64,000 nucleotides of DNA from Euprymna scolopes (lineage: Eukaryota): NCBI GenBank assembly GCA_053919585.1, contig CM132822.1, one strand, 5' to 3'. The notes beneath the pieces were generated by a model that saw nothing but the letters and a program-made list of their open reading frames with translations, had not been told where the DNA came from and made no database searches. Shown in pieces: positions 12,706-61,378 of this stretch. The position numbers and the translations under genes are program-made. The stretch's first letter is position 1; the number at the start of each line of letters is the position of its first letter.

Positions 12706-12812
12706 ACTACGGAACACTTTTACACCATTTTACATATAACACAAGAAGGATTATTCGAAAACTGGAAAAAATAAAACGGAAAATTGTCAAACAAGAAAAT
12801 GCTGTGCTGTTT

Positions 12813-12818
<6 letters not shown>

Positions 12819-12898
<80 letters not shown>
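12819..12898. repeat. (TA)n microsatellite
   Basis: Dinucleotide run. Confidence 0.97.
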
Positions 12899-29869: not shown

Positions 29870-30085
29870 CACTTTATTTGGATTCTTCAGACTGCTGTTC
29901 TCATCTGGAGTTTTATTTTCAGATTGTTTCAGTCGATATAATCTCCGACCTTCTTCAGGTGTATCTGGTCAAACTCGGGAATCTTTCTGTCAAACTCGGA
30001 AATCTTTCTGTCAAACTGAGAAATCTACACGGAATTTCAAACGGAAACGGCTCTAATTCCGTTATCTACGATTGGTTAGAAGGCA
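29870..30085 (-). mobile_element. Hammerhead-tailed SINE family, 3' part (copy a)
   Basis: Minus: ACAC-CTGAAGA-A-GGTCG-GAGATTATAT-CGACT-GAAA-CAAT; tandem AGATTCCCGAGTTTGAC sub-repeats. Confidence 0.7.
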
Positions 30086-30500
30086 TAAGTAATTATTTGT
30101 ATACTTCGAACTACTGTTCTCATTTTGAGTGTTACGGTCGATATTACCTCCGACCTTCTTATCAAACGGGAATTTTTCAGTTAAAATCAGGAATCTGCAC
30201 AAAATTTCGAACGTAATCCTTTATTTAATTCATGGGGTTTACATGTTTTCATCCCGTCAGCTATGACTGGTTAGAAGTCTTAAATAATTCGCAATTGTAC
30301 TTTGGGTGTCGATCGCACTGAGAATTTAACCTTCAACCTCCAGAAGAGTGTAAATCACAACTGAATTTTGCTAAGTAGTTTATCCACTACGCCAAGAGTG
30401 GACAAGATACACCTGAAGAAGACCGGAAGTTACAACGTTCTAAAATAACACTCAACATAAAAACATTTGTCCAAATAATACGAATAATACGAATAATAAA
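30086..30500 (-). mobile_element. Hammerhead-tailed SINE family with inverted 5' arm (copy b)
   Basis: Head TGGCGTAGTGGATAAACTAC on minus at ~30375-30394; plus-strand tail copy GACAAGATACACCTGAAGAAG... from ~30400. Confidence 0.75.
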
Positions 30501-30644
30501 TCGACATCTCAAAAATTCAGAAACGAAAGAAATCTATCCACTATTGTCTCATTCCCTTTTCCCTAACACTGTCGTCTTAAACAGAGCGATAGATTCTCTC
30601 ATATTATTTTAATTATTTGGATTATTGTGCTCATCTTAGATGTT

Positions 30645-30826
30645 ATTCTAACAACGTTTCAGCCGATGTAACTTTTTTCTCGGTTTAGTTTTTCTAACAA
30701 CGTTTCGGCCGATGTAACCTTTTTATCGGTTTAGTTTTTCTAACAACGTTTCGGCCTATGTAACTTTTTTCTCGGTTTAGTTTTTCTAACAACGTTTCGG
30801 CCGATGTAACCTTTTTATCGGTTTAA
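30645..30826. repeat. 46-bp tandem repeat (x4) derived from the 3' half of the SINE hammerhead
   Basis: CTAACAACGTTTCGGCCGATGTAAC...; reverse complement contains CATCGGCCGAAACGTTG. Confidence 0.85.
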
Positions 30827-31119
30827 TTTATTCTTGACTTTAGATCGACATTTTTTTCATTTCATATCACCGTCTTTTCTTAATTGCTTTTACACATTCT
30901 TAAACTCAAAATTCAATTCGAACTGGATACAGAGATTCGTATACTGTTTGTCGTGTAGCTTTATGAGGTGCAATCAAGAACCAATCAGAATCAAGATAAT
31001 GAGTTCACCAAATTACACGTAGCTTTTATCAGACAAAGTGTTTTATTTCTTATATCTTTTTTTTTCTTGCTTATTTTTTTTTTGTTGATTTTTTTTACTA
31101 TTCTATACAAATATTTTAT

Positions 31120-31540
31120 ATTACTTTGTTTCTTCGGGCTACAGTTCTCATTTTTGGTGTTATTTTTAGAACGATATAACATTAGATCTTCTTCAGGTGA
31201 ATCTTGTCGAACTTAGGAATCTTTCTGTCAAACTCCGAAATCTGCATCGTAATTCGAGCAGAATCCTTTATTTAATCTACGGGGGTAAAATGATCTTGTT
31301 CCGTCAGCCATGACTGAGTAGAAATCCTAAGTAATTCGCAATTTTATTTTTACTGTTGCCCGCACTGAACACTGAATCTTCAACCTCAAGAAGAGTGTCA
31401 CCTATAAAGGCATTTATCAAGTACTATATCCATTACGCCACGGATCCTTGCAAAAAGATTCCCGAGTTCGACATCGACCAAAACGTTGTGAAAATAACAC
31501 TCAAATTCCGAAGAATCCAAAGCCGAATATTAATCCTCGT
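31120..31540 (-). mobile_element. Hammerhead-tailed SINE family with inverted 5' arm (copy c)
   Basis: Head GCAAGGATCCGTGGCGTAATGG on minus starting at 31451; plus-strand tail ...ATCGACCAAAACGTTGTGAAAATAACACTC from 31452. Confidence 0.75.
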
Positions 31541-32424
31541 CTCCAAAATTCAGAAACAAAATATTGTTGTATTCATTTTCTTGTTTTTAAATCGCATTTT
31601 TTTTTTATATACATTTCCATTTTTTTTTTTTTTTTTTTTGTCATTGTTAGTCATCCTATTTTTATATTTTTTATTCCTAAAGGACGGGTAAAATGAATTT
31701 CTCGAACAAAATGCATAAAATCTTTATTTTAATTTTCACGTTATGGATTTTGATTAAAGAAGATTTATAAGTTTGCAAAGATTATCGAAAAAGGTGGACA
31801 ATATTGGAAATCTCGGGAAGCTTTGTTGTCACCCAGACTCTAGGGAACATCACTATCAATGGGTAATCTCTAATGATGACCCTAGTGAGAAGTCTTAGTC
31901 AGTACAAAAAAAAAAAAATAATAATAATAGCAGCAGCAGACATTTTACTATTTCAATACGATCGTTATCACCTGTTTCATAGATTCACTCATTGTTAAGC
32001 AATTTATATTTGATGTCGCTAAAGTTTTAAATGAATTACTTTCGCTTCATTTTTAGTTTTGATTCTAAATTAGATCTGTCAGTAAGTTATTTTGCTTTAC
32101 TTTAAACACGTTTTGCAGTCGCCGCCCTCTCTAGTAGAGATTGACATTAAAGAAATAAAAATGATAGAAATTATAGGAAATATAAATATGAGAGAGATTA
32201 ATAAGTAGTTACAGGTGGTAACACTGTACAACTAAAACGTCTAACGCTAACCCTAAAATTCATAAATTGACAAGTTGTGCAATGGCTAAAGTGTAAATAG
32301 ATGCAGTTCTACGTAATATTTTTTTCTAGGTTGATGTTAACTATTCAGTACAAACAATACTAAGAATATAATTTAAAATTATTACAAATTTCTATCAGGT
32401 TGTAATTTATGGAACAAAAATAAT

Positions 32425-32585
32425 CTACTCCCGTGAATTATGTATAGGGTTCAGTTCGAAATTCAGTACTGATTCCCAAGGCTGACAGAAACATTCTCGA
32501 ATTTGACAAGACGCACCTGGGAAAGAATGGGGGATTTCATCGGTCGAAATATTGTGGGAATAAAGTAGTCTAAATAATCCAAGTA
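32425..32585 (+). mobile_element. Decayed 3' fragment of the same SINE family
   Basis: GACAAGACGCACCTG...CATCGGTCGAAATATTGTG. Confidence 0.55.
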
Positions 32586-34269
32586 ATACAAATTATCATT
32601 TCTGATTTCAACAATTTCGATAAAGAAAAGGGGATTTAAAAGATTTGCTCAGCACCAATTAAGATGAGATCATTACGTGCATCTAATGTCAGAATGTCAG
32701 AGCTGAAATTGACCTAACTCATCCTTTACATTAAGAAACCACATAAGCAGACATCGTAAAACTCACATCACCGTCATTCTCCGAACATCTCATTCTAACC
32801 TAAGTTCGCGTCGTCTGCTACGAATAAATAATGTTGAAACACATCTTTCTCCTTTCTATCTTTTCTGTAGTTAAGCAATGTTGAGTCTTGTAGCTACTTA
32901 AATGAGTATTTGAAACCACCGGTGCCGTAAGCAGCACTCCATTCAGGTGTATAATTAAGTTGCTCGGAGGATAACTGCGGACAGACTGATGTTCTAACAT
33001 GAATTTTAATCTATCTGTTTCGTTTGCACATTTTAAAATTGGCAACAGGCATTTTGAGGATATTTGGAACTCGCTTTCAAATTTCCACTCCTCCTTCGAA
33101 AGGCCGGCTCTCTTTCTGTCTTGAATTCCCTTCACCCATGATTAATTCTGCCATTTGTTAGTTGTCACTATTCGACCACACAAAAGTTGACCACTCGGAT
33201 ATCCACCGAAGATAACGACCAAAGTCTCTCTTCTAAGGAGTTTACCTGCAGATAATTTTGGGTATTGCTTTTTCTTTTCTTTTTTTTCAAAAGGCCGGTC
33301 CCATCAGGACTCCCTATCCAATGAGATACTTACTTCACTTCAACCAAAGAAAACATCAGTTGCTTGACGGACTACAACCAGATATTTTAAATTCTCTGCG
33401 CCCCCGTTTCTTCCCTTGCTCAAGGCTCTATCTTCTACATCGTCTGCCACTCGAATGCATCACTGGAACACTTAGAATGTTTTGTGCAGCAGCAGCCATA
33501 TGCCAATGACCGAGCTAGTGTGCGCTGTGACTTCATGGCAGAGATTAAAAAAAAGCACACGTGTTCGAAGATACAAGTGTTTGGAGAAGTGACGTTCGAG
33601 ACGTGCCGAGAGAAGCGTGTCTTCGAGACGCGTGGGTGGCGTCAGAGCAGAGAAGAAAAGTCACATGCGACCGGAAAAGAAATGAACTTTGTAAACATTC
33701 AGAAAAATGTGTTGTTGAAAATACCAGATATAAAAGCCTTTGTTAAAAAAGAAAATGAGTCGAGTTATTTTCCTTTTTTCTGTTTCCTTGCGCCTGAGTT
33801 TACAACGTGCTGGGTCCGTTAAAATGTAATGGCAACGTTTAAAAAAAGTGTACAATGTTACACAATCCCCTCTGCGGTGTGCTTGATCAAGATTTAGCCT
33901 CAATCATCAATATCGAGTCTGGTGCGAAATACTTTGATTTTTACTAAATAAGCAGACAAAAATATCAGTAACAAAATGTTCCAGAATAATACATTTATCA
34001 TATTTTCATTTTGTTGAACTTTTATAATATTAATTACGGTAGAACATAAGCAAGAATATTTCTACTAATATTCCTTTACACAAAATTTCTTTTTTAATGA
34101 GTATATAAAATTATGCAAATGTGATAATGGCAGAAATTTTTGTAAACTACTTTCAATCTATAGGTGAACGGGATGTTAGTGTTTAATGCTGAAAAGAGTA
34201 CGCTTCTTTCCTTTAACAACTACAACCTTATCAACCACTGATTGTGATGGCAAACAACACCTTACCCGA

Positions 34270-34620
34270 AGGCTACTCCTTCAAACTCGTTGGTTAAACA
34301 TTCATAGGCAACATGAATTGGAGCGACTACATGAAAGACATTGCCAAGGTTGCTGCAAATAATGTGGGGTTCCTCTATTATGCTAGAAAATTACATCTTT
34401 ACAAATCTACGATTTGCTCCTGCGTGGAGTATTTGGGTTGGTGCATATATTACTAGTCTTTCACTCTTAGGCAGGATTCAAAAAGAGTTTCAAATTTAAT
34501 AGTTTCCGCACTAGCAACCAAGCTCAATCTCTCTCCCATCGTCACAATATTACAGCCCTGTGCCTGTTCTACAAGTACTTTAATGCAATGTACTCCGATG
34601 AACGTATAGCATACTCCCGA
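34270..34620 (+). mobile_element. Decayed CR1/Zenon-like fragment
   Basis: Nucleotide homology to 18800-19210 (CTTCAAACT..TTGGT, GTGGAGTATT, CCCATCG). Confidence 0.7.
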
Positions 34621-35108
34621 CAAACCATGCGGCATCCGTTAGCGACGGTATGACCAGAATTCACCTCCTAAGCCACTAAAGGGCTGATTATCGATGAAGG
34701 AGTTTTTCGACAGCTTTATTAACGATTGATATTTCTGAAGATCGACGTCACTATTCATTTTTTCGACGATCTACTAATGGTATTGTGACAATATACGTCG
34801 TAGTAACGAGACATGTGTGACAATCTAGTGATACTAGAACAGATAATCGGGAGATAGTAGCGTCCTGCCCTAAAATGCACCAAATATTTATCTTTTCGGC
34901 TTTCCCTTTGCAAAACTCAATTATGTTCTGCAAGGTCAGTGAATAGATATTTAAAGATATAAAAGATTGGACGCATGAAAACTTTTTCCAAAATTACTGG
35001 ATTCGGTATTAATTCATCTAAGTGGTGTTTTAGTACAGGCGTTGACTTTCCATCTCTTTGCTCGAGGCATTCATGAATTTATTGTTCCTCATCATTCAGA
35101 ACCGATTT

Positions 35109-38100
35109 TGGCATTAAATAATTCAGGTGTTGATATTAAATAATTCAGGTATTGACATTGAATAATTCAGGTGTTGATATTAAATAATTCAGGTATTGAC
35201 ATTGAATAATTCAGGTGTTGATATTAAATAATTCAGGTGTTGATATTAAATAATTCAGGTGTTGGCATTAAATAATTCAGGTGTTGACATTAAATAATTC
35301 ATGTGTTGATATTAAATAATTCAGGTGTTGACATTAAATAATTCAGGTGTTGGCATTAAATAATTCATGTGTTGACATTAAATAATTCAGGTGTTGACAT
35401 TAAATAATTCAGGTATTGATATTAAATAATTCACGTGTTGACATTAAATAATTCAGGTGTTGACATTAAATAATTCAGGTGTTGATATTAAATAATTCAG
35501 GTGTTGACATTAAATAATTCAGGTGTTGATATTAAATAATTCAGGTGTTGACATTCAATAATTCAGGTGTTGACATTAAATAATTCAGGTGTTGATATTA
35601 AATAATTCAGGTGTTGGCATTAAATAATTCAGGTGTTGACATTAAATAATTCAGGTATTGATATTAAATAATTCAGGTGTTGACATTAAATAATTCAGGT
35701 GTTGACATTAAATAATTCAGGTGTTGATATTAAATAATTCAGGTGTTGGCATTAAATAATTCATGTGTTGACATTAAATAATTCAGGTGTTGACATTAAA
35801 TAATTCGAAAGTGTTGGCATTAAATAATTCGAAAGTGTTGATATTAAATAATTCGAAAGTGTTGACATTAAATAATTCGAAAGTGTTGATATTAAATAAT
35901 TCGAAAGTGTTGACATTAAATAATTCGAAAGTGTTGACATTAAATAATTCAGGTGTTGGCATTAAATAATTCAAGTGTTGACATTAAATAATTCGAAAGT
36001 GTTGATATTAAATTATTCAGGTGTTGACATTAAATAATTCGAAAGTGTTGACATTAAATAATTCGAAAGTGTTGATATTAAATAATTCGAAAGTGTTGAT
36101 ATTAAATAATTCGAAAGTGTTGATATTAAATAATTCGAAAGTGTTGACATTAAATAATTCAGGTGTTGACATTAAATAATTCGAAAGTGTTGATATTAAA
36201 TAATTCGAAAGTGTTGACATTAAATAATTCGAAAGTGTTGACATTAAATAATTCGAAAGTGTTGACATTAAATAATTCGAAAGTGTTGACATTAAATAAT
36301 TCGAAAGTGTTGATATTAAATAATTCGAAAGTGTTGATATTAAATAATTCAGGTGTTGACATTAAATAATTCAGGTGTTTACATTAAATAATTCGAAAGT
36401 GTTGATATTAAATAATTCGAAAGTGTTGATATTAAATAATTCGAAAGTGTTGACATTAAATAATTCGAAAGTGTTGATATTAAATAATTCGAAAGTGTTG
36501 ACATTAAATAATTCGAAAGTGTTGATATTAAATAATTCGAAAGTGTTGACATTAAATAATTCGAAAGTGTTGATATTAAATAATTCGAAAGTGTTGATAT
36601 TAAATAATTCGAAAGTGTGTACATTAAATAATTCGAAAGTGTTGACATTAAATAATTCATGTGTTTACATTAAATAATTCGAAAGTGTTGATATTAAATA
36701 ATTCGAAAGTGTTGATATTAAATAATTCGAAAGTGTTGACATTAAATAATTCGAAAGTGTTGATATTAAATAATTCGAAAGTGTTGATATTAAATAATTC
36801 GAAAGTGTTGACATTAAATAATTCGAAAGTGTTGATATTAAATAATTCGAAAGTGTTGACATTAAATAATTCGAAAGTGTTGACATTAAATAATTCGAAA
36901 GTGTTGACATTAAATAATTCGAAAGTGTTGACATTAAATAATTCGAAAGTGTTGATATTAAATAATTCGAAAGTGTTGACATTAAATAATTCGAAAGTGT
37001 TGATATTAAATAATTCGAAAGTGTTGATATTAAATAATTCAGGTGTTGACATTAAATAATTCAGGTGTTTACATTAAATAATTCGAAAGTGTTGATATTA
37101 AATAATTCGAAAGTGTTGATATTAAATAATTCGAAAGTGTTGACATTAAATAATTCGAAAGTGTTGATATTAAATAATTCGAAAGTGTTGACATTAAATA
37201 ATTCGAAAGTGTTGATATTAAATAATTCGAAAGTGTTGACATTAAATAATTCGAAAGTGTTCATATTAAATAATTCGAAAGTGTTGATATTAAATAATTC
37301 GAAAGTGTTGACATTAAATAATTCGAAAGTGTTGACATTAAATAATTCAGGTGTTTACATTAAATAATTCGAAAGTGTTGATATTAAATAATTCGAAAGT
37401 GTTGATATTAAATAATTCGAAAGTGTTGATATTAAATAATTCGAAAGTGTTGACATTAAATAATTCGAAAGTGTTGATATTAAATAATTCGAAAGTGTTG
37501 ATATTAAATAATTCGAAAGTGTTGACATTAAATAATTCGAAAGTGTTGATATTAAATAATTCGAAAGTGTTGACATTAAATAATTCGAAAGTGTTGATAT
37601 TAAATAATTCGAAAGTGTTGGCATTAAATAATTCGAAAGTGTTGATATTAAATAATTCGAAAGTGTTGACATTAAATAATTCGAAAGTGTTGATATTAAA
37701 TAATTCGAAAGTGTTGATATTAAATAATTCGAAGTGTTGATATTAAATAATTCGAAAGTGTTGGCATTAAATAATTCGAAAGTGTTGACATTAAATAATT
37801 CGAAAGTGTTGACATTAAATAATTCGAAAGTGTTGACATTAAATAATTCAAGTGTTGACATTAAATAATTCGAAAGTGTTGATATTAAATAATTCGAAAG
37901 TGTTGACATTAAATAATTCGAAAGTGCTGATATTAAATAATTCGAAAGTTTTGACATTAAATAATTCGAAAGTGTTGACATTAAATAATTCGAAAGTGTT
38001 GACATTAAATAATTCGAAAGTGTTGACATTAAATAATTCGACAGTGTTGACATTAAATAATTCGAAAGTGTTGACATTAAATAATTCGAAAGTGTTGACA

Positions 38101-45805: not shown

Positions 45806-46057
45806 CGCCGTAAAACAAAACTAAACAAGCAAATTCTTTTTTATCGGTCGTTGCTGGTACATGATTTACTCATAACCAAATCTACTCCCGCCTGTCAGAT
45901 TTCGTAGCAGCCGAATAAAACTAAATTTTCCCGCCAAGAGAAAAAAGTTGTTATTTCAAAAACACCATTCACTCTAAAACACAAGGCAATGAGTTTGGAT
46001 TGACAACCAATATGAAAAACCTGTTTGATTCAAACAACAATATTCAGTATTAATTTA

Positions 46058-46145
46058 TTTGTTGCGGACTATTATTCTCATCTTTATTAGTTGTTTCACG
46101 ACCTTTCGGTCAACTATTCCTCTGGCCTTCGTCAAGTGGTAACCG
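46058..46145 (-). mobile_element. Variant hammerhead-like tail related to the SINE family
   Basis: CAC-TTGACGA-A-GGCCA-(loop)-TGACC-GAAA-GG-TC-GTG followed by AAAGATGAGAATAATAGTCCG. Confidence 0.6.
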
Positions 46146-50145: not shown

Positions 50146-50477
50146 CTAGCAGAGATACCCGGCGTAGTCCGGTTGTAAAATATGCTTAAATATGATATTT
50201 TAAGTTATGCAGATTTCGTATATATTATTATAGTAAATTTTCTATCGATTTTTAGATGTTTTAAAGTTGTGATTTCAAGAATAAAAATATATTCGTATGA
50301 CTTGGGTGCATCAGTTTGAATCGAAATCGAAACCAAAACTTATGAAAAATTCTTGGTAAAATTATTGATTTCAAGAAATGGAAGGTCATAATAATCAAAT
50401 GACAGCTGCTCAGAAGAAAAATATATAAGTATGATACATAAAATAACACGCACGCTATCGTATTACTATACAGAAGA
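50146..50477 (-). mobile_element. Short non-autonomous Helitron
   Basis: Minus strand 5' TC..., 3' CCGG-ACTACG-CCGG hairpin + CTAG; inserted between A and T. Confidence 0.7.
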
Positions 50478-51354: not shown

Positions 51355-51684
51355 ATTACGTGTCCTTTCATCAGCATCAGCGGACATGCTGTTTTAAAAG
51401 CGTCGGTGGCCACGGCTCTCCAAATTGTAGAACCATAGTAATCTCGGGAAGACAAGTAAAACGGTAGTTTTCCCATTGCTTTCCGCCTTGATTCGGGAGT
51501 GCATCTCCTTTAGTGAGTTAAACGCGCCCCCAGATAACAAAACTGGAAATTTCTACTACTTGGAGCGGTACATACAGTACCTATCCTTCCCGAATGGACA
51601 CCCATCTGGTACTGGCCAATTCATCGTTACTTAAGTTCGGTGATCTGGCGAGAACCGGTGTGTCAGCGTGATTGTGCCGTGCCC
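51355..51684 (-). mobile_element. 5S rRNA-derived SINE (SINE3-like) or 5S pseudogene with attached body
   Basis: Minus 51684->51580: CACGCTGACACACCGGTTCTCGCCAGATCACCGAACTTAAG...AGTACCAGATGGGTGTCC..CGGGAA aligns with the 5' ~100 nt of 5S rRNA including the internal A and C boxes; followed by a GC-richer non-5S body. Confidence 0.75.
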
Positions 51685-51929
51685 TTTACATAATCTAATA
51701 CGATCCTTGCTGTTATATTACGTGTTTTTATTTAATCTGCCTTAATTATCTTACTCAATTTGAAAACCCAGCTACATGTGAAAAATTCATAATATTCATC
51801 ATTCACATAAAAATGCGTCTGTAAATAAATATATTTATTTGAAAATTAATCCTAACCCAATTAATCTTTTCGATAATATCATTTACTGGATTCGTATTGT
51901 TATATAGATTAATTTTAAATTCATCATAT

Positions 51930-52827
51930 TGTCTAATTGCGAACATAAACCTTTATTTAATCCATAGAAGTAGCAGACTCTCGTTCCGTCAGCCTTGAGC
52001 AAGGACCCGTGGCGTAGTGGATAAACTACTTGGTAAAATTCAGTTGTAAGTTACACTCTTTTGGGGGTGAAGATTCAATCCTCAGTGCGGGCGACACTCA
52101 ACATACGCCTTCTACTCAATCATGGCTGATGAAACAAGAACATGCTATCCCTGGAGATTAAATAAAAGGTCTAATTCGCAATTTCGTCTAAATGCCCGAG
52201 TTCATCAGAAAAATTCCCGTGTTCAACAAGACACACCTTAAGAATGGCGTGTTACGTTGTCGTATCATAAAATGAGCGTTTGTTGTATATTGGTTGAAAT
52301 TGGAATGGAGATGATATATTAAAACGTGTCTATTTATAAATGATTGAGTGTTTGATTATCTTATCAGAGTTAATGACGTTGTGTGTGTGATCGTCTAGTG
52401 GTCTTTCTATTACATATGTTCATATGCTGTTAAGTGTGAATGTGTGTGTGACATGTCATTTGAACATACCTTCTGTCATTTTGTTGCTTCGTCTGAGAGG
52501 GAGACTTGATACCTGTTTTTGGGGACGAAGATTTATTTCACACCAAGACAAGAAATTGGTTCTATAGTTTTTTTATTCACCTTCCAGTTTGTTCACAGAA
52601 GTAAGGAAAGTGAATTTGGCCTGTGGTTTCTTCTTCTAGGTCTTATTTCTACCACGTCAGCGTTCGTTCCCCACCCCCAGCGAAAGGGAGGAGATAACAG
52701 CGAAGCCGTCCACTCTCGTCCAAGTCGCAACCAAATCTCTTCGATTCAGCTAACTTGATCACATGATTCACACGCAATCAAATCAGCTGATATTGACTTC
52801 CAGTCAACGTGTCTACACTATAATTCA

Positions 52828-52884
<57 letters not shown>

Positions 52885-52970
52885 ACAGGCGGAAATTACA
52901 TCAACGAAACGTTGTGAAAATAACAGTTAAAATTAGAACAATAGTCCGAAGAATATAAATAATACGGGTT
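51930..52970 (+). mobile_element. Hammerhead-tailed SINE with inverted 5' arm (copy e), split by a solo LTR
   Basis: Inverted body 51930-51994; head GCAAGGACCCGTGGCGTAGTGG from 51999; B-box-like GATTCAATCC at ~52072; tail resumes at 52888 (...CATCAACGAAACGTTGTGAAAATAAC). Confidence 0.8.
52250..52887. mobile_element. Solo LTR carrying a terminal (CT)n tract (copy 2)
   Basis: TGTTA...TAACA with 4-bp TSD GGCG (52246-52249 / 52888-52891); removing it restores the SINE tail. Confidence 0.85.
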
Positions 52971-53694
52971 CAAACATTAGGTAGTGTTGAGTAACATTGA
53001 CTATTTCAAATATTCAACTCTCCTGTTGTAGAATAGTGTTGGAAAATCGCCAATCGCCACATGATCTACCTTTTTGTTCATAGAGGGAAACGGCTGTTCG
53101 TCTTACTTCTTATCAGGGAGTCGTTAGCTCATTGGATAGTTACGTATTCAGTAAGATTGATATAGCAGCGGTTGATCTTTTCTTTTACCTTATTTTTGTG
53201 GCTCTAATATAAGTAATTAAACAGAACCATAAATAATTATGTTAATTGCTCTGAGATTTGACTATATTCTTACAGTAATTTACTGCTAGTCGAGATGAAC
53301 TGTTTCTTCCAGCCTTTGTAGTGATATAGAAGTCGCAAAACTTGGCTCAATCACTTCCACGTCTAATTCTCCGGAGGAAAAAAATATATCAATTTTCTGT
53401 CATGTACTCCCTCCCATGATATAACTACGGGGATACTTTTTACTTAACTTTTAACTTAACTTTTAACTTAACTTCTAATAGAATATTGTCTTACTTAACT
53501 AAGCGCACGTGACATTTTCTAGTTTAAACCTTATTTTACTCAAACAACATCTTGAATTGTTACATTCTTTCAGATGATTCTCTTGGACGATTTAAAATGT
53601 TTATTATCTCTAAAACAAATTTAATATTAACATATCGTTGTCATCACATCAGTTGAGAACCTTGGATCAATCATTTTTTAACTCTTGTTACCCC

Positions 53695-54085
53695 CAAACA
53701 AGAGACATTGCCACTTGGACGTAAGGAATACTATTTCGGATCATGTCCACAGAGAGCTATTTGGAGAAATGAGCACAATATCTGTTCAAATTACATTTAG
53801 TTAGCACAGCCAGGGAAGAGGGAAACGGGGAAAAATTCGAAAGTTTTGCAGTCAGAAGAAAAGTATATTAGGCTTTCCTGGATCTGCACTTCTACAATTA
53901 AGTGTTGGCACTTGATTGATCGTGCTAGGTCAATTAGATTGGAGACTTTTGGGACCGTGTATAAGAATAAGACACTAGTGTTGAATACACCAACCCAAAT
54001 ATCGCAACAATATTCCATAGATGGGCTAATTGTAGCTTTTTAGAAATACAGGATACTCTTAGATGTGAGAAATTTTTTGTCCCTA
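53695..54085 (-). mobile_element. Decayed CR1/Zenon-like 3' fragment
   Basis: MEYCCDIWVG; 3' UTR homologous to 18540-18660. Confidence 0.7.
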
Positions 54086-54514
54086 TTTACTTTCCTCCCC
54101 ATGATGTAACAATTAGACAAAAGTCGTTTACAATGTGAGAGAAAGTGTAGCTCCCTTAAAAGGAGTACACTCAGTTAGGACAAAAATTTTTAAAAATGCC
54201 TGAATCTATAAACATTTTTCCTTCACAAAATGACAAAAAATACAAACTATAATATTAAAACAGATACTACATTTTACTCCTGATCAAAAGGCTAAAAAAA
54301 CACACGAACAATATTTGCGCTTCTCTGTGTATTGCACAAATGCCCTCGTTCTGGGTTCCCCTATTTGCATATTAACTATACATATTTTCATATGTAAGTA
54401 ATTAAATTGCAATCTCACATTTACACGTAAGGCGCATCGCACAGGAGTAAATGACAAGTTCATTTGCTACTCATACTTTATAGTGTTTACTCATATTCTC
54501 CCCGAACGGAGCTA

Positions 54515-55080
54515 ATTGACACTGAGGACGTAAGGGGTTACTATTAGAGACTTGAACAGCCAAATATCTGTTCGCATTACATTTAAACTTCTGCATTTTA
54601 GCAAAGTCACAAAAGCAAGAAACAGGGACGAAATTCCAAAGCCTAGCAGTTCGAAGGCAGAAACTATAAGAGTATAAAACTTTTCTTGCATATAGAAATA
54701 TTTACAGTGAATGGATGCGATTTTGATGCTTGCCAGGTTAGTCGAATGTATTTACGCCGAATGGGTATTTACAAGTTCGTCAGCGCACCTTTCATAAAAA
54801 TACTTGTAGAATAGGCACAGATATGCAACATTACAATGATGGGACATAGGTTGGGACTTGGTGGATAGTGCTTAGACCTATTAGATTAAAAATATTATTT
54901 TGGTCTCTGTCTAGATTAGAGAGGCTAAACGTGGCAACAATACTCCATGCATGGGTGAATGGTGGCTTTGTAGAGATACAGTATACTGGCAGGTGTGTGT
55001 AGTTTTCTAGCATTGTAGAAGGAGCCAACAACATTCTTTGCATCAGCCTTGCCAATGTCTTTTATGCATTACTGTTGATG
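54515..55080 (-). mobile_element. Decayed CR1/Zenon-like 3' fragment
   Basis: YLYKATIHPCMEYCCH by frame reading; homologous 3' UTR. Confidence 0.7.
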
Positions 55081-55509
55081 CCTGGTATGTGTTATCGCTG
55101 TTTAATGATGTTTTTACTCATAGTTTACATTTGAATACGACGTGCAAAATTGCCAATACTGACTCTGCTGTAAATGTCATCATTTATCCTTTACTTGTTT
55201 CAGCATTTACACTGGGCGAATTGATGTGGCTTTCTCTGAAGCTAAATGTATATTAGAAGTGATACCCAGTTATACCTGTCCACTGCAAAAGGGAGATTTT
55301 TAACAACGTTAGTTTCTATACGTTTTTTTTTTTGCAAAGAAATATCGTCATTTTTATTCATTTATTCATTTTGTACGAATAAAATTATTCTATCGTTGTC
55401 ATTAGTTTCCTCGATATCTTTCTAGTTAGAATTGTTCCTTGAAAGATAACAATTGTACGCAAGAGGTACCATGTGAAAGTTGGCAACCTCCTAAGTGAAA
55501 GCATTTCGA

Positions 55510-55583
55510 TTGAACGACCTGGATTCGAACTTAGAACACCCAGATTTTCAGTCTGTGTCGTTATCCACTTAGCCACAGTCACC
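55510..55583 (-). pseudogene. tRNA-like sequence (Phe-type GAA loop), SINE head or pseudo-tRNA
   Basis: TGGCTAAGTGG A box, CAGA-CTGAAAA-TCTG anticodon arm, GTTCGAATCC B box; acceptor and T stems imperfect. Confidence 0.6.
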
Positions 55584-56399
55584 TGAAACAATTCAGTTTA
55601 AAAATAGCATGGAAATTGCTTTAATAGAAAATATCTTTGGAATAATTCTACGGATAAAAATCTGAGAGCTATGGTTCAGTTAGTGTGAAGCTGATTCAGG
55701 ATCACACTTACTAACGAGACTATCACCAAAGTGTCCTCAAATATTAATGAACGGTAATAAAACAAAACATGCTATACATTAGTGAGCACGTCCGTCATGT
55801 GTTGTTACTCTTTCCGTGGCGGGTGCATAACATCATACACCCATGCAGTCTTATTGTTAGCAAGGTTTCGTTAATACGGGGTAACCCCACCCCCAAAAAA
55901 AGCTAAGTGGAGGCCATCTAGAACATATGGTGTAGAACGGAGAAAAAAGGCCAAAGACCCTAGGGTTTTGATGTGATGTTTTGAACATAATAAACTAGTT
56001 ATGACCAAAGTTTCATTTCATTCGGACAAAACAGTAAGAAACGGGGCCTAATTAGAGTTGGGGGCCCCTTTTTTTTAGTCACCCTGTACTCGCGTTGTTG
56101 TGTCATGTTTATCGATTGTTTATGAAGGACGCCGGTTTGTCTTTTAAGAATTTCTTTAACATAACAAGAGAGACAGAAATCGAATGCAAGTTTGTGCTCA
56201 CCGTCCTCCGCCTCCTTCTAGATTGTCCTTGACCGCCGTGTCCTTCATCTGTTCTCATTGGTGTCGGCAGGCTGAGTGAGGTAGAGCTGTTCTCCGATGG
56301 AAGTGGCGTAATTTTTTTTTTTTTACTTCCGCTTTTAGACTCTATCATCCTCTGTTTCTTCTTTCGCTATCTAACATATGGACTGAAGTTTATTTGTAA

Positions 56400-57166
56400 C
56401 TAGCAGTTCAGTCCGGCTTTGCTCAGGCCCTATATACTGTTCATAACTTGCCCTATGTGTGAATACTCTTTATGTAAAATTTAAAATGTTTAGACCAAAA
56501 ATTGTCTGAGTAATTTGGTAGAGACCGCAGAGGACAATTTTTTAAACTTTGACTCCAATTTTGTCCCCTTAACATTTATTGTTTTGGTCTCAAATCAAAA
56601 TAAAAGGTTTGACCCGTATCCAAGTTACTTAAACCTAAACTTTCAAGTGTTTAGATTCAAAATTGGTGGAGGAGTTTGGTGGAATCTACAAAGGTCAACT
56701 CTTTCAACTTTGACCTTTTGGCAGCGAAATTTTCGCCCCAAAACTGATTAAAATGCTTGCCGCATGTCTGAATACCCGTTATGTAAAATTTCAAATGTTT
56801 AGGCAAAAAATTGGCTGAATAGTTTTCTAGAGACCGCAAAGGTAAAATATTTTAATCTTTGACCCTTTGATAGTTCAAATTTTGTACCCAAACCGATTAA
56901 AAAGCTTGCCCTATTTCTGAATACCCTTTAAATAAAATTTCAAATTTTTAGACCAGAAATTGGAGGAGTGAATTGGTAGAGATCGCAGAGGTCAAATCGT
57001 TGAACTTTGACCCAAATTTCTGGTCGAAAACCGATTAAAAAGATTTTCTTAAATCTCAATACCCCTTGTATCAAATCTCGAGTCTGTAGACTGAAAATTG
57101 ACAGAGTAGTTTGGTAGGGAAATGCACACAGACACACAAACAATTTCACTTTTTTAGATATATAGA
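56400..57166 (-). mobile_element. Non-autonomous Helitron copy (same family as the 21.4-23.7 kb array)
   Basis: Minus strand 5' TCTATATATC...AAGTGA..GTGTGT, shared body with internal duplications, 3' CTAG; A|T target. Confidence 0.8.
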
Positions 57167-57828
57167 TAAACTGTGTATACAGAGTAGGTTGTAACGCTTC
57201 CATAGGTGATATTTTTATTCCATCTATTATTTACATTTGTCGTTTTGTTATCTCTAATTTCATTTGTTACAATTAACTTGAATCATCCTTTCTTAACCTG
57301 ACAAATCGATTTATCAAAATCGATTTAAAACAATCTTCCACGGTTGAAATCGTTTTTTTTTTTTGTTTTGTTTTGTCCTATTTTTTTATTTTTTCTTGAA
57401 AAATAACTGTTTTACTCACAATAGAACATGCACATTATCGATTACGTATTAATCGATTTCATCTCATTGAAATCGATTACAAATCGATTGTTGAATCGAT
57501 TATAAAATTAAAGTTTCCTCACTCGAACTTCGCACATCGCAGTTGCATTATAAAATTTGTAAAAGCTAAAGTTTGCAAATTTCCAAAACAAAAATTTGAT
57601 CTGATAAAAAAATTGTATTTAAAAATTATCAGTGACTTTTGAAGTGAAAAGAAAAGAAATATTAAATAATTACATTCAAACTAATTTTCACACACACTTC
57701 ATTAATCGCATGAAATAGAACAATACGCCTCTCGGGAAAGGTAAAATATAAAGTAATCCAAAAAGTTCTGTTCTGTTCATTTTTTAAGGAAAAAAAACGA
57801 AACGTTTCACAGTATGCGTAACTTATAT

Positions 57829-58780
57829 TTATTCTTCGAAATAATTGTCCTCAGCATCCAACGTGTCTCCAACTATTCATGCCCTTGCAGTAGACATGTA
57901 GAATGTGTTGGACGCAAAGAAGTGCGTGAAGACTTGGCACAGGTCTGCTTCATTGGTGAAGGATTTTCCATGAGTATAATTATACAGAGGTGATCAGATG
58001 GTGCAAGGTAAGGTGAATAAGATGGATGACATAAGTACCCTACCCATGGTATTCCTGATCACTGACGCGACATGCAGCCTGGCGTTGTCATGGTGAAAAA
58101 GCACACCTTTGCGATTCCCTATGGCTAGCTCCTCCTGATGTAATGCTTGTTGCATACGTTTCAATTATTGCAAGTATACGTCTCCAGTGAGCGTTTGATT
58201 AATCAGTAGCAGTTCATATTAAACCACGTGACGACCAGACACAAAGCATAATCTTTCGTGAGTACATAGGCGATCTTGCCGTGAGAGGGACAGCATCCTG
58301 AGGAGACAATCAATGTCTGAAATGTTTAGTAGTTTAGTACAGAATCCACTTTTTATCACTGGTAAGCACTCGATTGAATAGGGGTGAAAAGCAGCGATAC
58401 GCAATCTGCCACTTGCTGTCCATTGTGGATCTCCCACGGTGTTGGCAGAACTCACTTGTTCAGTTTATACGCTTCGTTGGCCAATGCAGGTGAAGTGTAT
58501 TTCATAGGAAACATTGAACTCTCTTACAATTTCAACACTCGTTAGACTGCTGTCTCCTTTAATGCTCACTTTCAGGACTCCGACTTGTGGTCGTCCACTG
58601 CGAGGATTATCACGGAGGGATAAATTTCCCGGCTTTAATTTAAACCAACGCCTTGTAACACGTTCATTTACAATGCTATTTCCAAAGATTGAACATGTGG
58701 CGACTTGATAAAGCTGCTGATAATTCCACTTTGAAGTCGTAAAGCAAACAGTCTCGAACGAGATCTTTAGACATTTCCAT
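57829..58780 (-). mobile_element. Mariner transposase pseudogene
   Basis: MEMSKDLVRDCLLYDF...PRSGRP...; NRKGVLFHHDNARLH; HPSYSPYLAPSD; GKSFTNEADL...FFAS...YFEE*; multiple frameshifts. Confidence 0.9.
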
Positions 58781-58884
58781 TCTTCTCACAGTTGTCCGTA
58801 TTATAACTGATGACCGAATACGTTGCGCGTGTTTTTTTTTTATGATACCTGAGGTTCCTACTTCCGGCTCTCCGAATTTTAAGA

Positions 58885-59350
58885 CAAATAACACCCTACC
58901 TGAGAATTCTTCCTTCAAACTTCTCGGCCTAAAATTCACTGGCAATATGAACTGGAACAAATATATTGAGGACATTGCGAAGGCTGCTGCAAAGAAGTTG
59001 GGTTCTCTCTAACGAGCTAGAAGATTACTCACACCTGAGAGTATCATGTAACCTCTACAATTTGCCCATGCATGAATATTGTTGCCCCATATGGGCTGGT
59101 GCATCTACCACTAGCCTCTCCCTCTTGAATAAGGTCCAAAAAAGAGTTTTTAATCAAATACGTCTCATATTGTCAACTAAGCTCCAACCCCTATCCCATC
59201 GCCGCTATGTTGCATTTCTGTGCTTGTTTTACGAATATTTTAATGGAATGTGCTCTGATGAACTCGTTGCACTTGTGCCTCCTCGACGTACATATCTCCG
59301 GTAAACCCGATTAGTAACAAAATCTCACCTCTTCACTGTTGAAGTCTCTG
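58885..59350 (+). mobile_element. CR1/Zenon-like fragment upstream of the mariner ORF
   Basis: EYCCPIWAGASTTSLSLLNKVQKRV...LQPLSHRR. Confidence 0.85.
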
Positions 59351-60669
59351 ATATATGTGTGTGTGTGTGTGTGCGTGTGTGTGTGCGTGTGCGTGTCTTA
59401 TATATATATAAAATAAAAAAATTTATAATCAACATTTCTTTACGTGTAAACCAAAAAAAAACACATCTCAATATAAAAAATATAAATATTTTTAAAGATA
59501 AATTTGAAAACTTTAAATGTCAGGAAAATGATAAAATCATATTTATTTGGTGTTGTAAGTCCAATATTTCGCTAAAAATAGCTTCATCAGGGTAATAAGC
59601 CAGTCCGTAGTTTTTTTGTTGTTGTTTTTTTTCCCCCCTTCATTTTTTTGTTATGAAGGAGATAAGTCCTTGGAGAACAAAAATTTAAATGTACGAGCTG
59701 TCCATTTTTTAACGTGTGCGTCGCTCCAGTTTCGAGCAGGAATATATGTTAAAAAAGGTAGTTACACACTATTTGAAGACATTTATTTTGAATAGAATTT
59801 AAAGTTAACTTTGAAAACTTTAAATGTCAGGAAAATGATAAAATCATTTTTATTTACTTTTGTTGGTGTTGTAAGCCTCATCAAGCTAATTTTTTATTGA
59901 AAGTTAAGACAAATTTGTATGTAAACATTTAAGATATATTTTTCTTATGTAAAAACATTCTCAACAAAATCAAAATCATGATTAAAAATAAACTTTGATT
60001 ATATCATATTTAGAAATGTTTTTATGCAAATTTTAAAATTAACATAGAATTACGTAATTATCAGAATAGACACTTCGTCATTATTACTTATTATACGCCG
60101 GTAAAAGTTAGCAAGACTTCCGCTAAACAAAAGCGGAAGTCGAAAAAAGCTATATTATTTTTTTTAAAATATGAAACGTTTTGTCTGCGGGATCAAAACA
60201 TTCATTGGAGTGAAAAACACGGTGTCGTTGATGGAAAAGGGGAGAGGAGAGGAAAAGATAGAAAGCGAAAGTGACCTAGACAGCTGGGTGGCCAGAAAAC
60301 CTCTCCTTCTATTTTTTTATTTTTCGCTAATACTTTTCGGTAAGAATGATAGCAAACGATATTCGTTTAAGAAAGTTTTTTTTTTTTAGTAAATTATCGT
60401 ATTTTAGTAAATCGCTTTAAATAAATTACTGCTGATACTATCGAAACTATTACCTATGCATACAATAAAAAGACAATAAAATTATAACACCAAACATTTA
60501 TCATGAACATTTGAAAGTTTCTGTTAATTAGACATTCAAAGAATCGTTCAACTGCACAAAACATACAGCATTTCAAAATATCATGTATTTATGATTTGAA
60601 TGACAGAAATCCGTTTTGATGGTGATTTAGTGATGGTACATGAAAGAAAACCTTCGTAACTATTCATTT

Positions 60670-60694
60670 GCACACACACACACACACACACACA

Positions 60695-60756
<62 letters not shown>
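60670..60756. repeat. (CA)-(TA)-(CA) compound microsatellite
   Basis: Seen directly. Confidence 0.95.
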
Positions 60757-60799
60757 TGTGAACATAAAAACATTTTTCAAAAATGAATTAATGTAAATA

Positions 60800-61378
60800 T
60801 TTATTATTTTGATTATTCGGATTGCTATTCTCACCTTCAGTTTTATTTTCACAACATTTCAGTCGATGTAACTTCTGCAAGGACCCATGGCGTAACAGGT
60901 ACAAATGTAAAATTCAGTTTTAAACGACACTCTTATGACGATTTAATTCTCTGTGCAGGAAATACTAAAAATACAATTGTGGTTTATTTAAGACTTGTAT
61001 CCGGTCATAGCTGACAAAAGAAGGGCATGCCAAATAAAGGGTATGTTTAAAATTAAATGCAGGTTCTCCGAGTTCGGTAGAAAGATACCCGAGTTCGATA
61101 AAGGGGAAACATTTACCCTTATTGGACGAAGTAAAAATTATAAACAGAGAAGAACTGTTGAGGTTAAGACTATCCAAAGCAGCAGCACATATGATTGGCA
61201 ACCGTCACCTACTAAGCAGACCTATTATAGAAGTTAGATTCCCGAGTTCGACGGAAAGATTCCTGAGTTTGACAAGATACACCTGAAGAAATTTGGAAGT
61301 TACATCGACCGAAACGTTGTGAAAATAACACTCAAGATTAGAAAAATGGTCCAAAGAATCCAAAGAATACGAATCAGA
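60800..61378 (+). mobile_element. Hammerhead-tailed SINE with inverted 5' arm (copy d)
   Basis: Inverted tail 60800-60876; head GCAAGGACCCATGGCGTA from 60877; CAC-CTGAAGA...CGACC-GAAA-CG-TT-GTG at 61280-61321. Confidence 0.8.

What the first reader, a model, noticed from the sequence alone, without database searches (positions are those of the whole stretch)
29870..61378. tRNA-headed SINE with a hammerhead-ribozyme tail and an inverted 5' arm: a candidate Penelope-dependent SINE
Seen: at least five copies (29870-30085, 30086-30500, 31120-31540, 51930-52970, 60800-61378) plus fragments (32425, 46058) of a ~330-450-bp non-coding element. The head GCAAGGACCCGTGGCGTAGTGG has a Pol III A box with a B-box-like G(G/A)TTCAATCC ~50 nt later. 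The tail consensus CAC-CUGAAGA-A-GGUCG-(10-nt loop)-CGACC-GAAA-CG-UU-GUG fits a minimal type I hammerhead (stem I CAC/GUG, palindromic ACGU stem III). There is no poly(A) tail. In four of four copies with a head, an inverted copy of downstream sequence of variable length is joined within a few bases of the head's start (junctions ~30399, 31451/2, 51994-9, 60876/7). Established: minimal hammerheads and inverted pseudo-LTRs are hallmarks of Penelope-like elements, whereas classical SINEs borrow LINE 3' tails. Inference: this is a Pol III SINE mobilised in trans by a PLE RT/GIY-YIG, with the ribozyme defining the RNA end. Caveat: every individual copy here has a damaged ribozyme; only the by-eye consensus is intact. 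I cannot say whether the family is already catalogued.
Basis: partly seen in the sequence, partly recalled or inferred. Interest (0 to 1): 0.9.

Follow-up and report, generated by a model that had tools for sequence, protein, structure and literature searches.

The report
Hammerhead-tailed SINE moved by Penelope elements
This is an old, very abundant short non-coding jumping element of a cephalopod: it has a Pol III-type promoter head and a minimal hammerhead motif in its tail, and its insertions carry the scars typical of Penelope-like retrotransposons, so Penelope enzymes rather than a LINE very probably copied it.

Summary
The window holds about eight pieces of a 348/383-nt non-coding repeat. 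The head has A and B boxes. The tail reads CAC-CUGAAGA-A-GGUCGG-loop-UCGACC-GAAA-CG-UU|GUG. The exact motif occurs 2,592 times in this 5.9-Gb genome and never in the reversed control.

The inverted arm is real but is not tied to the head. About 70% of insertions are head-to-head inverted pairs with variable 5' truncation of either arm. These pairs are flanked by 8-15-bp target-site duplications, so each pair is one insertion event.

The element has two alternative 3' ends, 36 nt apart. In 28 of 33 pairs one arm carries this extra stretch and the other lacks it (p about 4e-5). This is the published "tail at one end only" signature of Penelope-like elements (PLEs). Two autonomous PLE families of the same genome, one of them in this window, show the same signature. 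They also carry hammerhead motifs of the same build, with compensatory helix changes.

Not supported:
- The ribozyme does not set the RNA end: copies run 53 or 89 nt past the cut site.
- The head is not recognisably a tRNA.
- No PLE with a matching tail was found.

Verdict: a new variant of a known kind, closest to Schistosoma SMalpha and to animal retrozymes. The scan has noted this kind before on other DNA of this genome.

The parts
29863..29873 (.). Left copy of the 11-bp target-site duplication ATCTATCCACT of the compound insertion
   Evidence: The exact motif is found only at 29863-29873 and 30532-30542
29874..30094 (-). 5'-truncated copy (consensus 118-351) with the short 3' end. It lies head-to-tail directly behind the next copy, a partial tandem like a pseudo-LTR. 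The hammerhead core and helix II are kept; helices I and III are mutated.
   Evidence: Local alignment to the consensus; blastn
30092..30394 (-). Near full-length copy (consensus 12-344) with A and B boxes and the short 3' end
30401..30531 (+). Inverted arm (consensus 247-383) joined head-to-head to the previous copy; it carries the 36-nt tail
30532..30542 (.). Right copy of the 11-bp target-site duplication
30588..30812 (-). Four tandem units of about 48 bp made from the 3' half of a related hammerhead (loop II to about 14 nt past the cut site), followed by a short-type tail
31115..31451 (-). Full-length copy (consensus 1-349) with the short 3' end; helix II is decayed
31471..31557 (+). Inverted arm (consensus 278-380) with the tail. 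The pair is flanked by AAATATTTT / AAATATTGT.
32411..32616 (+). Diverged solo 5'-truncated copy (consensus 153-373)
46041..46138 (-). Fragment of a sister hammerhead-bearing family (helix II GGCCAG/UUGRCC)
51935..51998 (-). Short inverted arm (consensus 142-205) abutting the head of the next copy with no gap
51999..52244 (+). Copy from position 1 to 266. It is interrupted by about 645 bp of unrelated DNA that includes a (CT)n run.
52890..52964 (+). Continuation of the same copy (consensus 270-345) with the short 3' end
60802..60875 (-). Inverted arm (consensus 272-345) that starts inside loop II of the hammerhead; short 3' end
60877..61374 (+). Full-length copy (consensus 1-251 and 212-350) with an internal block of about 130 bp at 61102-61235; short 3' end. 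The 5' strand of helix II is destroyed.
10889..12822 (.). Autonomous-type Penelope-like element of a second family, as two inverted arms facing outwards into (TA)n. Minimal hammerheads lie at 11042-11077(-) and 12669-12704(+). A reverse-transcriptase remnant lies at 11907-12101(-). A 35-nt tail is present on the left arm only. It serves as the comparator inside the window.

Best explanation
This is a non-autonomous, SINE-like retroposon family, 348 nt long, or 383 nt with the tail. It was copied into the genome by the reverse transcriptase/GIY-YIG endonuclease of a Penelope-like element (PLE), not by a LINE.

Proposed cycle:
1. Pol III starts about 11 nt upstream of the internal A box, at element position 1. 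It reads through the element, which has no run of four T, into flanking DNA. This step is inferred.
2. The PLE protein recognises the 3' module, about positions 250-383. This module has the layout of a PLE pseudo-LTR/ORF junction: a minimal type I hammerhead, then two internal start sites for reverse transcription, 53 and 89 nt past the ribozyme cut site. That the layout matches is shown. That the protein binds it is inferred.
3. The enzyme nicks both strands of an AT-rich target 8-15 bp apart. Each 3'-OH primes a cDNA, usually one from the upstream site and one from the downstream site.
4. The two cDNAs run towards the RNA 5' end and are joined where they meet. This gives a head-to-head inverted pair with variable inner ends, a 36-nt tail on one arm only, and a target-site duplication. 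The products are shown. The steps are inferred from the products and from the published in vitro behaviour of a PLE protein.

The hammerhead is retained under selection across families, but it was not cut in the RNAs that were copied. It more likely serves as part of the protein-binding module, or acts at another step. The family is old and probably dead: median identity to the consensus is 85%.
For: - Discrete unit. The consensus is sharp from position 1 to 383 and the upstream flank is unconserved. In an unbiased sample, 10 of 30 arms reach positions 1-19 and none runs further.
- Promoter motifs. The A box TGGCGTAGTGG is at 12 and the B box GGTTCAATCC at 77. The sense strand has no TTTT.
- Pairs are the main insertion form. 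22 of 30 copies chosen only for an intact motif have an inverted partner.
- Pairs are single events. A target-site duplication scoring 8 or more flanks 17 of 33 pairs, against 1 of 33 controls. The window unit 29874-30531 has an 11-bp duplication.
- Tail on one arm only. 28 pairs are long plus short, 3 short plus short and 2 long plus long; binomial p = 3.8e-5.
- Match to the published PLE signature. PLEs show an inverted 5'-truncated copy and a 30-40-bp tail that is often at one end only (PMC8557442). A PLE protein cleaves and extends both strands and starts at two internal sites, with the tail lying between them (PMC11167929).
- Same signature in PLEs of this genome. PLE-1 encodes RVT_1 plus GIY-YIG. 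It has short and long ends 29 nt apart, and 6 of 7 pairs are one of each. PLE-2, in the window, has a 35-nt tail on one arm only.
- Hammerhead. The motif has the core CUGAAGA...GAAA and the unpaired A 5' of stem II that is described for PLE hammerheads (PMC4209133). Across the SINE, the sister family and PLE-1, 4 of 9 helix pairs show compensatory changes and 97.8% of cells pair, against 0 compensatory pairs in the slid controls.
- Outward orientation. In the rows listed for PLE-1 and the sister family, neighbouring motifs lie almost only in the -/+ order, tails outward.
Against: - No autonomous PLE with the SINE's tail was found. Against PLE-1 only the 36-nt hammerhead aligns (z = 4.9), and against PLE-2 nothing does.
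- PLE-1 and PLE-2 insert into (TA)n, the SINE does not: only 5 of 124 SINE flanks hold (TA)n. The sampled PLEs are therefore probably not the drivers.
- The head is not recognised as a tRNA. Pol III transcription is not shown.
- PolyA RNA-seq shows two-stranded multi-copy coverage, no depth in the flanks, and no pile-up of ends at position 1 or at the cut site.
- The Rfam hammerhead models do not score even intact copies.
- The sample is 89 loci plus the window, not the whole genome.
Confidence: 0.8

Rival explanations
1. The 383-nt unit is not a separate SINE. It is the 3' end (pseudo-LTR or UTR) of an autonomous Penelope-like element that is almost always 5'-truncated, and the A/B-box resemblance is chance.
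For: PLE insertions are heavily 5'-truncated (PMC8557442). The head is not recognisably a tRNA.
Against: 5' ends pile up sharply at positions 1-19 and no conserved sequence lies upstream. None of 60 SINE loci shows reverse-transcriptase or GIY-YIG coding sequence beside a copy (tblastn). Both the A and the B box are well conserved, and the head 27-mer has 1,351 near-exact copies.
Confidence: 0.08
2. It is a classical tRNA-type SINE mobilised by a LINE (for example RTE or CR1), and the inverted arms arise by twin priming.
For: Most known SINEs, including the catalogued cephalopod Ceph-SINEs, use LINE machinery (PMC5786205). Twin priming gives 5' inversions.
Against: There is no poly(A), microsatellite or LINE-like tail. 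Both arms contain the same 3' region, which twin priming does not produce. The element has two fixed 3' ends 36 nt apart, used one per pair. Partial tandems occur. The Ceph-domain motifs are absent.
Confidence: 0.05
3. It is an animal non-LTR retrozyme: tandem hammerhead repeats are transcribed, self-cleaved, circularised and copied from the circle.
For: It is a non-coding element with a type I hammerhead. Retrozymes are proposed to depend on PLEs (PMC7229834; preprint 10.64898/2026.07.22.740005). A small local tandem lies at 30588-30812.
Against: Copies are dispersed singles or inverted pairs with target-site duplications, not tandem arrays of whole units. Units start at a fixed head and end 53 or 89 nt past the cut site, not at the cut site. 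No read ends fall at the cut site. The hammerhead is the minimal kind without helix III.
Confidence: 0.05
4. It is a MITE or other DNA transposon with terminal inverted repeats.
For: Inverted arms with flanking duplications look superficially like TIRs with target-site duplications.
Against: Arm lengths vary from 19 to 380 nt. The two arms are unequal. About 30% of copies have no inverted arm. The duplications vary in length.
Confidence: 0.02

Closest known systems
SMalpha, the SINE-like retroposon of Schistosoma mansoni (Ferbeyre et al. 1998, as cited in PMC8490949 and PMC4209133)
   Same: A short non-coding, highly repeated retroposon that combines a Pol III-type internal promoter with a type I hammerhead, in a genome rich in Penelope-like elements.
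   Different: From my own knowledge: SMalpha carries a canonical hammerhead with loop-loop contacts and is largely tandem on the W chromosome. Here the hammerhead is the minimal PLE type without helix III. Copies are dispersed and show the PLE insertion scars (inverted pairs, a tail at one end), which I did not find described for SMalpha.
Minimal hammerheads in pseudo-LTRs of Penelope-like elements (Cervera and de la Pena 2014, PMC4209133)
   Same: The core CUGANGA...GAAA, a short helix I, no real helix III (the palindromic ACGU suggests dimers), an unpaired base 5' of stem II, and frequent dual motifs on opposite strands 100-700 bp apart.
   Different: Here the motif sits in an element with its own Pol III-type head and a fixed 5' end, not in a truncated coding PLE.
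PLE insertion architecture and the 'tail' (Craig et al. 2021, PMC8557442; Frangieh et al. 2024, PMC11167929)
   Same: An inverted 5'-truncated copy, partial tandems, a 30-40-bp extension at one end only, and reverse-transcription start sites tens of nt downstream of the hammerhead.
   Different: Those papers describe autonomous elements; this element is a 383-nt passenger. In vitro no strand difference in start site was seen. Here 85% of the pairs whose two ends could be classified use one site per arm, and the tail-less arm is the more complete one in 21 of 28 pairs.
Animal non-LTR retrozymes (PMC7229834; preprint 10.64898/2026.07.22.740005) and non-autonomous Chlamys elements such as MRC1 (PMC8557442)
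   Same: Non-coding passengers thought to use PLE enzymes, with similarity to the pseudo-LTR or 3' end of PLEs.
   Different: Retrozymes are tandem, carry classical hammerheads and give circular RNAs. Neither group is reported with a tRNA-type A/B-box head.
Ceph-SINEs of squids and cuttlefish (Akasaki et al. 2010, as described in PMC5786205)
   Same: SINEs of a few hundred bp with a Pol III-type head, in cephalopods.
   Different: The published Ceph-domain strings (CCTTGGGAAAG, CCAGCTATGGGTTAAATAGT) are absent from the consensus. Ceph-SINE bodies derive from RTE LINEs. No hammerhead is reported for them in the text I could read.

Membership tests
SINE (Pol III, tRNA type) | Internal A box and B box at the 5' end | tested here: met
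   TGGCGTAGTGG at 12-22 and GGTTCAATCC at 77-86 of the 30-copy consensus. The head 27-mer has 1,351 near-exact genomic copies and 0 in the control.
SINE (Pol III, tRNA type) | Head recognisably derived from a tRNA (cloverleaf or homology) | tested here: not met
   ARAGORN finds nothing in the window, the loci or the consensus, even at a relaxed threshold. The Rfam tRNA model gives no hit at E up to 10 on the window copies or on a full-length copy.
SINE (Pol III, tRNA type) | Short, non-coding, high copy number, with a fixed 5' end | tested here: met
   383 nt; at least 6,581 first-look candidates; 5' ends cluster at positions 1-19 and no conserved sequence lies upstream.
SINE (Pol III, tRNA type) | 3' tail shared with an autonomous partner | tested here: inconclusive
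   Only the 36-nt hammerhead is shared with PLE-1 (27 of 33 aligned bases, z = 4.9). Nothing is shared with PLE-2. Only two PLE families could be sampled.
SINE (Pol III, tRNA type) | Transcribed by Pol III from position 1 | tested here: inconclusive
   Three polyA RNA-seq runs show coverage on both strands from many copies and no pile-up of starts. PolyA libraries are unsuited to Pol III RNA.
PLE-type integration (element dependent on Penelope-like elements) | Inverted 5'-truncated copy directly adjacent, with tails facing outward | tested here: met
   47 head-to-head pairs in 89 loci plus the window. 22 of 30 copies in the unbiased sample are paired.
PLE-type integration (element dependent on Penelope-like elements) | [quoted passage not shown] | tested here: met
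   The 3' ends fall at about 348 and about 383. 28 of 33 pairs have one of each, p = 3.8e-5. The same holds for PLE-1 (6 of 7 pairs) and PLE-2.
PLE-type integration (element dependent on Penelope-like elements) | Partial head-to-tail tandems (pseudo-LTR) | tested here: met
   Window 29874-30394: consensus 12-344 is followed directly by consensus 118-351, inside one target-site duplication. L024 shows the same arrangement. How frequent this is was not measured.
PLE-type integration (element dependent on Penelope-like elements) | Target-site duplication around the whole compound unit | tested here: met
   17 of 33 pairs score 8 or more against 1 of 33 controls; typical length is 9-15 bp.
PLE-type integration (element dependent on Penelope-like elements) | Same target preference as the PLEs sampled in this genome, (TA)n microsatellites | tested here: not met
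   Only 5 of 124 SINE flanks hold (TA)n. Nearly all the PLE-1 ends shown, and both PLE-2 ends, run into (TA)n or TA/CA-type repeats.
Hammerhead ribozyme, minimal type I (PLE type) | Conserved core CUGANGA ... GAAA and a cleavage triplet GUH | tested here: met
   The consensus has CUGAAGA, GAAA and GUU|G. 2,592 exact genomic instances of core plus helix II.
Hammerhead ribozyme, minimal type I (PLE type) | Helices I and II maintained by compensatory change | tested here: met
   4 of 9 pairs change on both sides across the SINE, the sister family and PLE-1. 97.8% of cells pair, and the slid controls give 0. Only three independent lineages were compared.
Hammerhead ribozyme, minimal type I (PLE type) | Recognised by the curated covariance models (Rfam hammerhead families) | tested here: not met
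   No hammerhead hit at E up to 10 on the window copies, nor on an intact full copy. None at E up to 1 on 18 loci with intact SINE, PLE-1 or sister-family motifs. These models expect a helix III.
Hammerhead ribozyme, minimal type I (PLE type) | Self-cleavage | not testable with these tools
   No read ends at the predicted site in polyA RNA-seq, which is weak evidence. Published PLE hammerheads cleave poorly, as dimers or with the help of protein (PMC4209133, PMC11167929).
Animal non-LTR retrozyme | Tandem arrays of whole hammerhead-bearing units | tested here: not met
   Copies are dispersed singles or inverted pairs with target-site duplications. There are only local partial tandems.
MITE | Terminal inverted repeats and target-site duplications of fixed length | tested here: not met
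   Inner ends of the arms range over positions 1-321 and the two arms are unequal. About 30% of copies have no inverted arm.
Ceph-SINE superfamily | Ceph domain (CCTTGGGAAAG and the RTE-like block CCAGCTATGGGTTAAATAGT, as printed in PMC5786205) | tested here: not met
   Neither string, nor CCTTGGG, occurs on either strand of the consensus.

The most novel reading that the evidence does not exclude
These elements are a true SINE class whose partner is a Penelope-like element rather than a LINE. Their thousands of insertions are a natural record of the PLE mechanism that goes beyond the in vitro work. Each event uses both internal reverse-transcription start sites once, one per DNA strand (28 of 33 pairs). 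The cDNA started at the upstream site is usually the more complete one (21 of 28, p = 0.013). This fits a dimeric RT/endonuclease copying a single RNA with a leading and a trailing polymerase, where the trailing polymerase stops at a variable point and creates the inversion junction.
Probability: 0.3. Interest if true: 0.75.

Novelty: new variant of a known kind. Interest (0 to 1): 0.6.

Why it matters
SINEs are defined in textbooks as passengers of LINEs. PLEs are a third, poorly understood class of retrotransposon, and their passengers have so far been described as tandem retrozymes or as truncated copies.

A dispersed, Pol III-headed family with thousands of copies that carries every PLE insertion scar would show that PLE enzymes can drive a SINE-like amplification. 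It would also explain why many repeats in cephalopod and other invertebrate genomes look like palindromes that repeat finders mis-split.

The family also gives a large natural data set on how PLEs integrate: both strands primed, two start sites, a tail at one end. Only one in vitro study exists on this so far. Finally, it bears on what the conserved minimal hammerhead is for, because the copied RNAs were not cut at it.

Tried and rejected
- Rfam at gathering and at E-value thresholds, on the window, on an intact full-length copy and on 18 loci: no hammerhead or tRNA hit. The curated models cannot see hammerheads that lack helix III, so I did not read this as absence.
- ARAGORN on the window, the loci and the consensus, also at a relaxed threshold: nothing.
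- blastn of the SINE consensus against 30 PLE loci: no hit. Smith-Waterman with shuffles: only the hammerhead aligns to PLE-1 and nothing aligns to PLE-2.
- tblastn of the PLE-1 ORF against all SINE loci: no coding remnant next to the SINEs. It did reveal the second PLE family in the window.
I did not try to read flanks by other means, so all statistics rest on 89 loci plus the window.
- RNA evidence: three polyA RNA-seq runs and one RNA contig set laid on L019:1300-2100. They gave multi-copy coverage on both strands, no coverage in the unique flanks and no discrete ends. This gives no support for cleavage or for a Pol III start, but the library type is wrong for that question.
- Folding of the 3' module: only helix II and a 7-bp stem (AGAUGAG/CUCAUCU) around the short end; the z-scores are not significant.
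- Lunse et al. 2017 could not be read.
- MITE, twin priming and retrozyme readings were considered and rejected, as set out under the rival explanations.
Only individual copies were described.

Full report
**What is in the window.**

The window is AT-rich (32% G+C). It lies on contig C40 of a 5.9-Gb genome. Earlier notes of the scan call it a cephalopod, and the public runs that hold its DNA are mollusc runs.

A whole-genome search with window:31120-31452:- gave at least 6,581 first-look candidates.

From 30 fetched copies I built a consensus. The element is a non-coding repeat, not a virus or provirus.

Conservation starts sharply at GCAAGGATCC... (position 1). It ends either near position 348 or near position 383. 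There is no poly(A).

The A box TGGCGTAGTGG is at 12-22 and the B box GGTTCAATCC at 77-86. The tail reads CAC-CUGAAGA-A-GGUCGG-AGGUUACA-UCGACC-GAAA-CG-UU|GUG at 256-297. The exact core plus helix II occurs 2,592 times in the genome and never in the reversed control. The head 27-mer with up to two mismatches occurs 1,351 times.

**The inverted arm is general, and each pair is one event.**

I mapped the consensus on 89 loci plus the window and found 154 arms, among them 47 head-to-head pairs: a minus arm followed by a plus arm, tails outward.

In the 30 loci chosen only because they hold an intact motif, 22 copies have such a partner.

The inner ends vary over the whole element. In 28 pairs at least one arm reaches the head. 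In 19 pairs both arms are truncated. So the junction "at the head's start" is simply what results when one cDNA is full length.

The pairs are flanked by direct repeats. 17 of 33 score 8 or more, against 1 of 33 for a shifted control, and typical lengths are 9-15 bp.

In the window, 29874-30531 is one compound insertion between two copies of ATCTATCCACT. It consists of:
- a 5'-truncated copy (consensus 118-351);
- head-to-tail in front of it, a near-full copy (consensus 12-344);
- an inverted arm (consensus 247-383).

Variable and unequal arms, copies without any partner, and duplications of variable length exclude a MITE.

**The diagnostic feature: two 3' ends, one of each per pair.**

Outer ends fall into two classes, about 345-352 ("short") and about 380-383 ("long"). 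They differ by 36 nt.

Solo arms use both classes about equally (22 long, 20 short). Among the 33 pairs with two classifiable ends, 28 are long plus short, 3 short plus short and 2 long plus long. Random pairing predicts 50% mixed pairs; p = 3.8e-5. The tail-less arm is the more complete one in 21 of 28 pairs (p = 0.013).

This matches published descriptions of Penelope-like elements:
- An inverted 5'-truncated copy lies next to the element, partial tandems occur, and a 30-40-bp "tail" is often present at one end only (Craig et al. 2021, PMC8557442).
- A purified PLE protein cleaves and extends both DNA strands. It starts reverse transcription at two internal RNA sites, and the interval between them is the tail. 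Those sites lie some 90 nt downstream of the hammerhead cut site (Frangieh et al. 2024, PMC11167929).

In the SINE the predicted cut lies between positions 294 and 295. The two ends lie 53 and 89 nt further on.

**PLEs of the same genome show the same signature.**

A search for GIY-YIG gave 15,395 first-look candidates. 28 of the 30 fetched loci are one young family, here called PLE-1. [quoted passage not shown]

About 500 bp behind the ORF, PLE-1 carries CUC-UUGAAGA-A-GCCCG-CAUAAAU-CGGGC-GAAA-CG-UU|GAG. This motif has 4,429 exact copies.

PLE-1 ends either 37 nt past the cut or 29 nt further on, in both cases followed by (TA)n. In 6 of 7 inverted pairs one end is short and one is long.

The window holds a second family, PLE-2, at 10889-12822. 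It has a reverse-transcriptase remnant, two inverted arms, the hammerhead CUGACGA-U-GGCG-GAAA-CGCC-GAAA-GCGCUC, and a 35-nt tail on the left arm only.

In the rows listed, neighbouring motifs lie almost always in the -/+ order.

**The hammerhead.**

The motif has the conserved core, a GUU cleavage triplet, a 3-bp helix I and a 6-bp helix II. Helix III is absent apart from the palindrome ACGU. An unpaired A lies 5' of stem II.

This is how Cervera and de la Pena (PMC4209133) describe the minimal hammerheads of PLEs, including dual motifs on opposite strands 100-700 bp apart.

I compared the SINE, PLE-1 and a sister family with helix II GGCCAG/UUGGCC. The sister family has 7,446 exact copies, and the fragment at 46041-46138 belongs to it. 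Across these three, 4 of 9 helix pairs change on both sides and 97.8% of cells pair. Sliding the 3' partners gives no compensatory pair. With three lineages this is suggestive, not proof.

The Rfam hammerhead models do not score even intact copies. Formal membership by covariance model is therefore not met, which is expected for a motif without helix III.

**What is not supported.**

The ribozyme does not define the end of the copied RNA, since all copies continue 53 or 89 nt past the cut. This agrees with the in vitro finding that uncut RNA is the substrate.

The head has A and B boxes and the sense strand lacks TTTT. However, neither ARAGORN nor the Rfam tRNA model recognises a tRNA.

PolyA RNA-seq laid on a well-kept copy gives multi-copy reads from both strands. 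There is zero depth in the unique flanks and no pile-up of ends. Neither a Pol III start nor cleavage in vivo is therefore shown.

No partner was found. The SINE shares only the 36-nt hammerhead with PLE-1 (z = 4.9) and nothing with PLE-2. PLE-1 and PLE-2 sit in (TA)n, whereas only 5 of 124 SINE flanks do.

The family is old, with a median identity to the consensus of 85%. Its driver may be an older or extinct PLE lineage.

**Comparison and verdict.**

The closest things known are:
- SMalpha of Schistosoma, a SINE-like element with Pol III boxes and a canonical hammerhead;
- the minimal hammerheads of PLE pseudo-LTRs;
- animal non-LTR retrozymes, recently argued to be non-autonomous PLE derivatives;
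- non-autonomous Chlamys elements.

I found no description of a dispersed element with an A/B-box head that bears the PLE tail signature. Repbase and Dfam could not be searched. The Ceph-SINE domain strings printed in PMC5786205 are absent from the consensus.

I rate it a new variant of a known kind. Other agents of this scan reached similar readings on other DNA of this genome. I treated those notes as leads only.

Noticed in passing
window 51569-51684 (-): A 5S rRNA-like sequence scores just over the Rfam gathering score (38.6 against 38 bits), about 250 bp from a SINE copy. It is probably a 5S pseudogene or the head of a 5S-derived repeat. The giant-squid genome paper reports about 24,000 5S-derived loci (PMC6962438).
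   Followed up: no
L011:3076-3117(-), L008:2179-2220(-), window 46041-46138(-): A sister hammerhead-bearing family (CAC-CUGACGA-A-GGCCAG-loop-UUGGCC-GAAA-CA-UU-GUG) has 7,446 exact genomic motifs, more than the SINE studied here. In the listed rows it also occurs as close -/+ pairs. Its head and full structure were not worked out.
   Followed up: partly
window 30588-30812 (-): A 48-bp unit from loop II of the hammerhead to 14 nt past the cut site is repeated four times in tandem inside a tail copy. It may be a small satellite seeded by the element, or repeated template switching.
   Followed up: partly
L062-L090 (for example L080:915, L062:905/3032) and window 10889-12822: Both autonomous PLE families sit with nearly all of their 3' ends in (TA)n or TA/CA microsatellites. 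PLE-1 copies are about 95% identical to one another and many keep open frames of about 800 codons in the genome table, so this family looks recently active. PLE-1 has U instead of C at hammerhead core position 3, with G8 kept.
   Followed up: partly
L019:1462-1974: In three polyA RNA-seq runs the first-mate strand bias flips between the two inverted arms of one pair (about 1.3-1.5-fold each way). Transcripts that contain the element therefore favour one orientation of it. Which orientation depends on the library type, which I could not check.
   Followed up: no
window 52245-52889 and 61102-61235: Two SINE copies are interrupted by unrelated blocks: about 645 bp with a long (CT)n run, and about 130 bp after which consensus positions 212-251 are repeated. 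The nature of the inserts was not determined.
   Followed up: no
SINE consensus 312-318 and 361-367: A perfect 7-bp complement (AGAUGAG/CUCAUCU) brackets the short reverse-transcription start site. This recalls the stem-loop at the start site of the anole PLE (PMC11167929), but the fold energy is not better than that of shuffles.
   Followed up: partly
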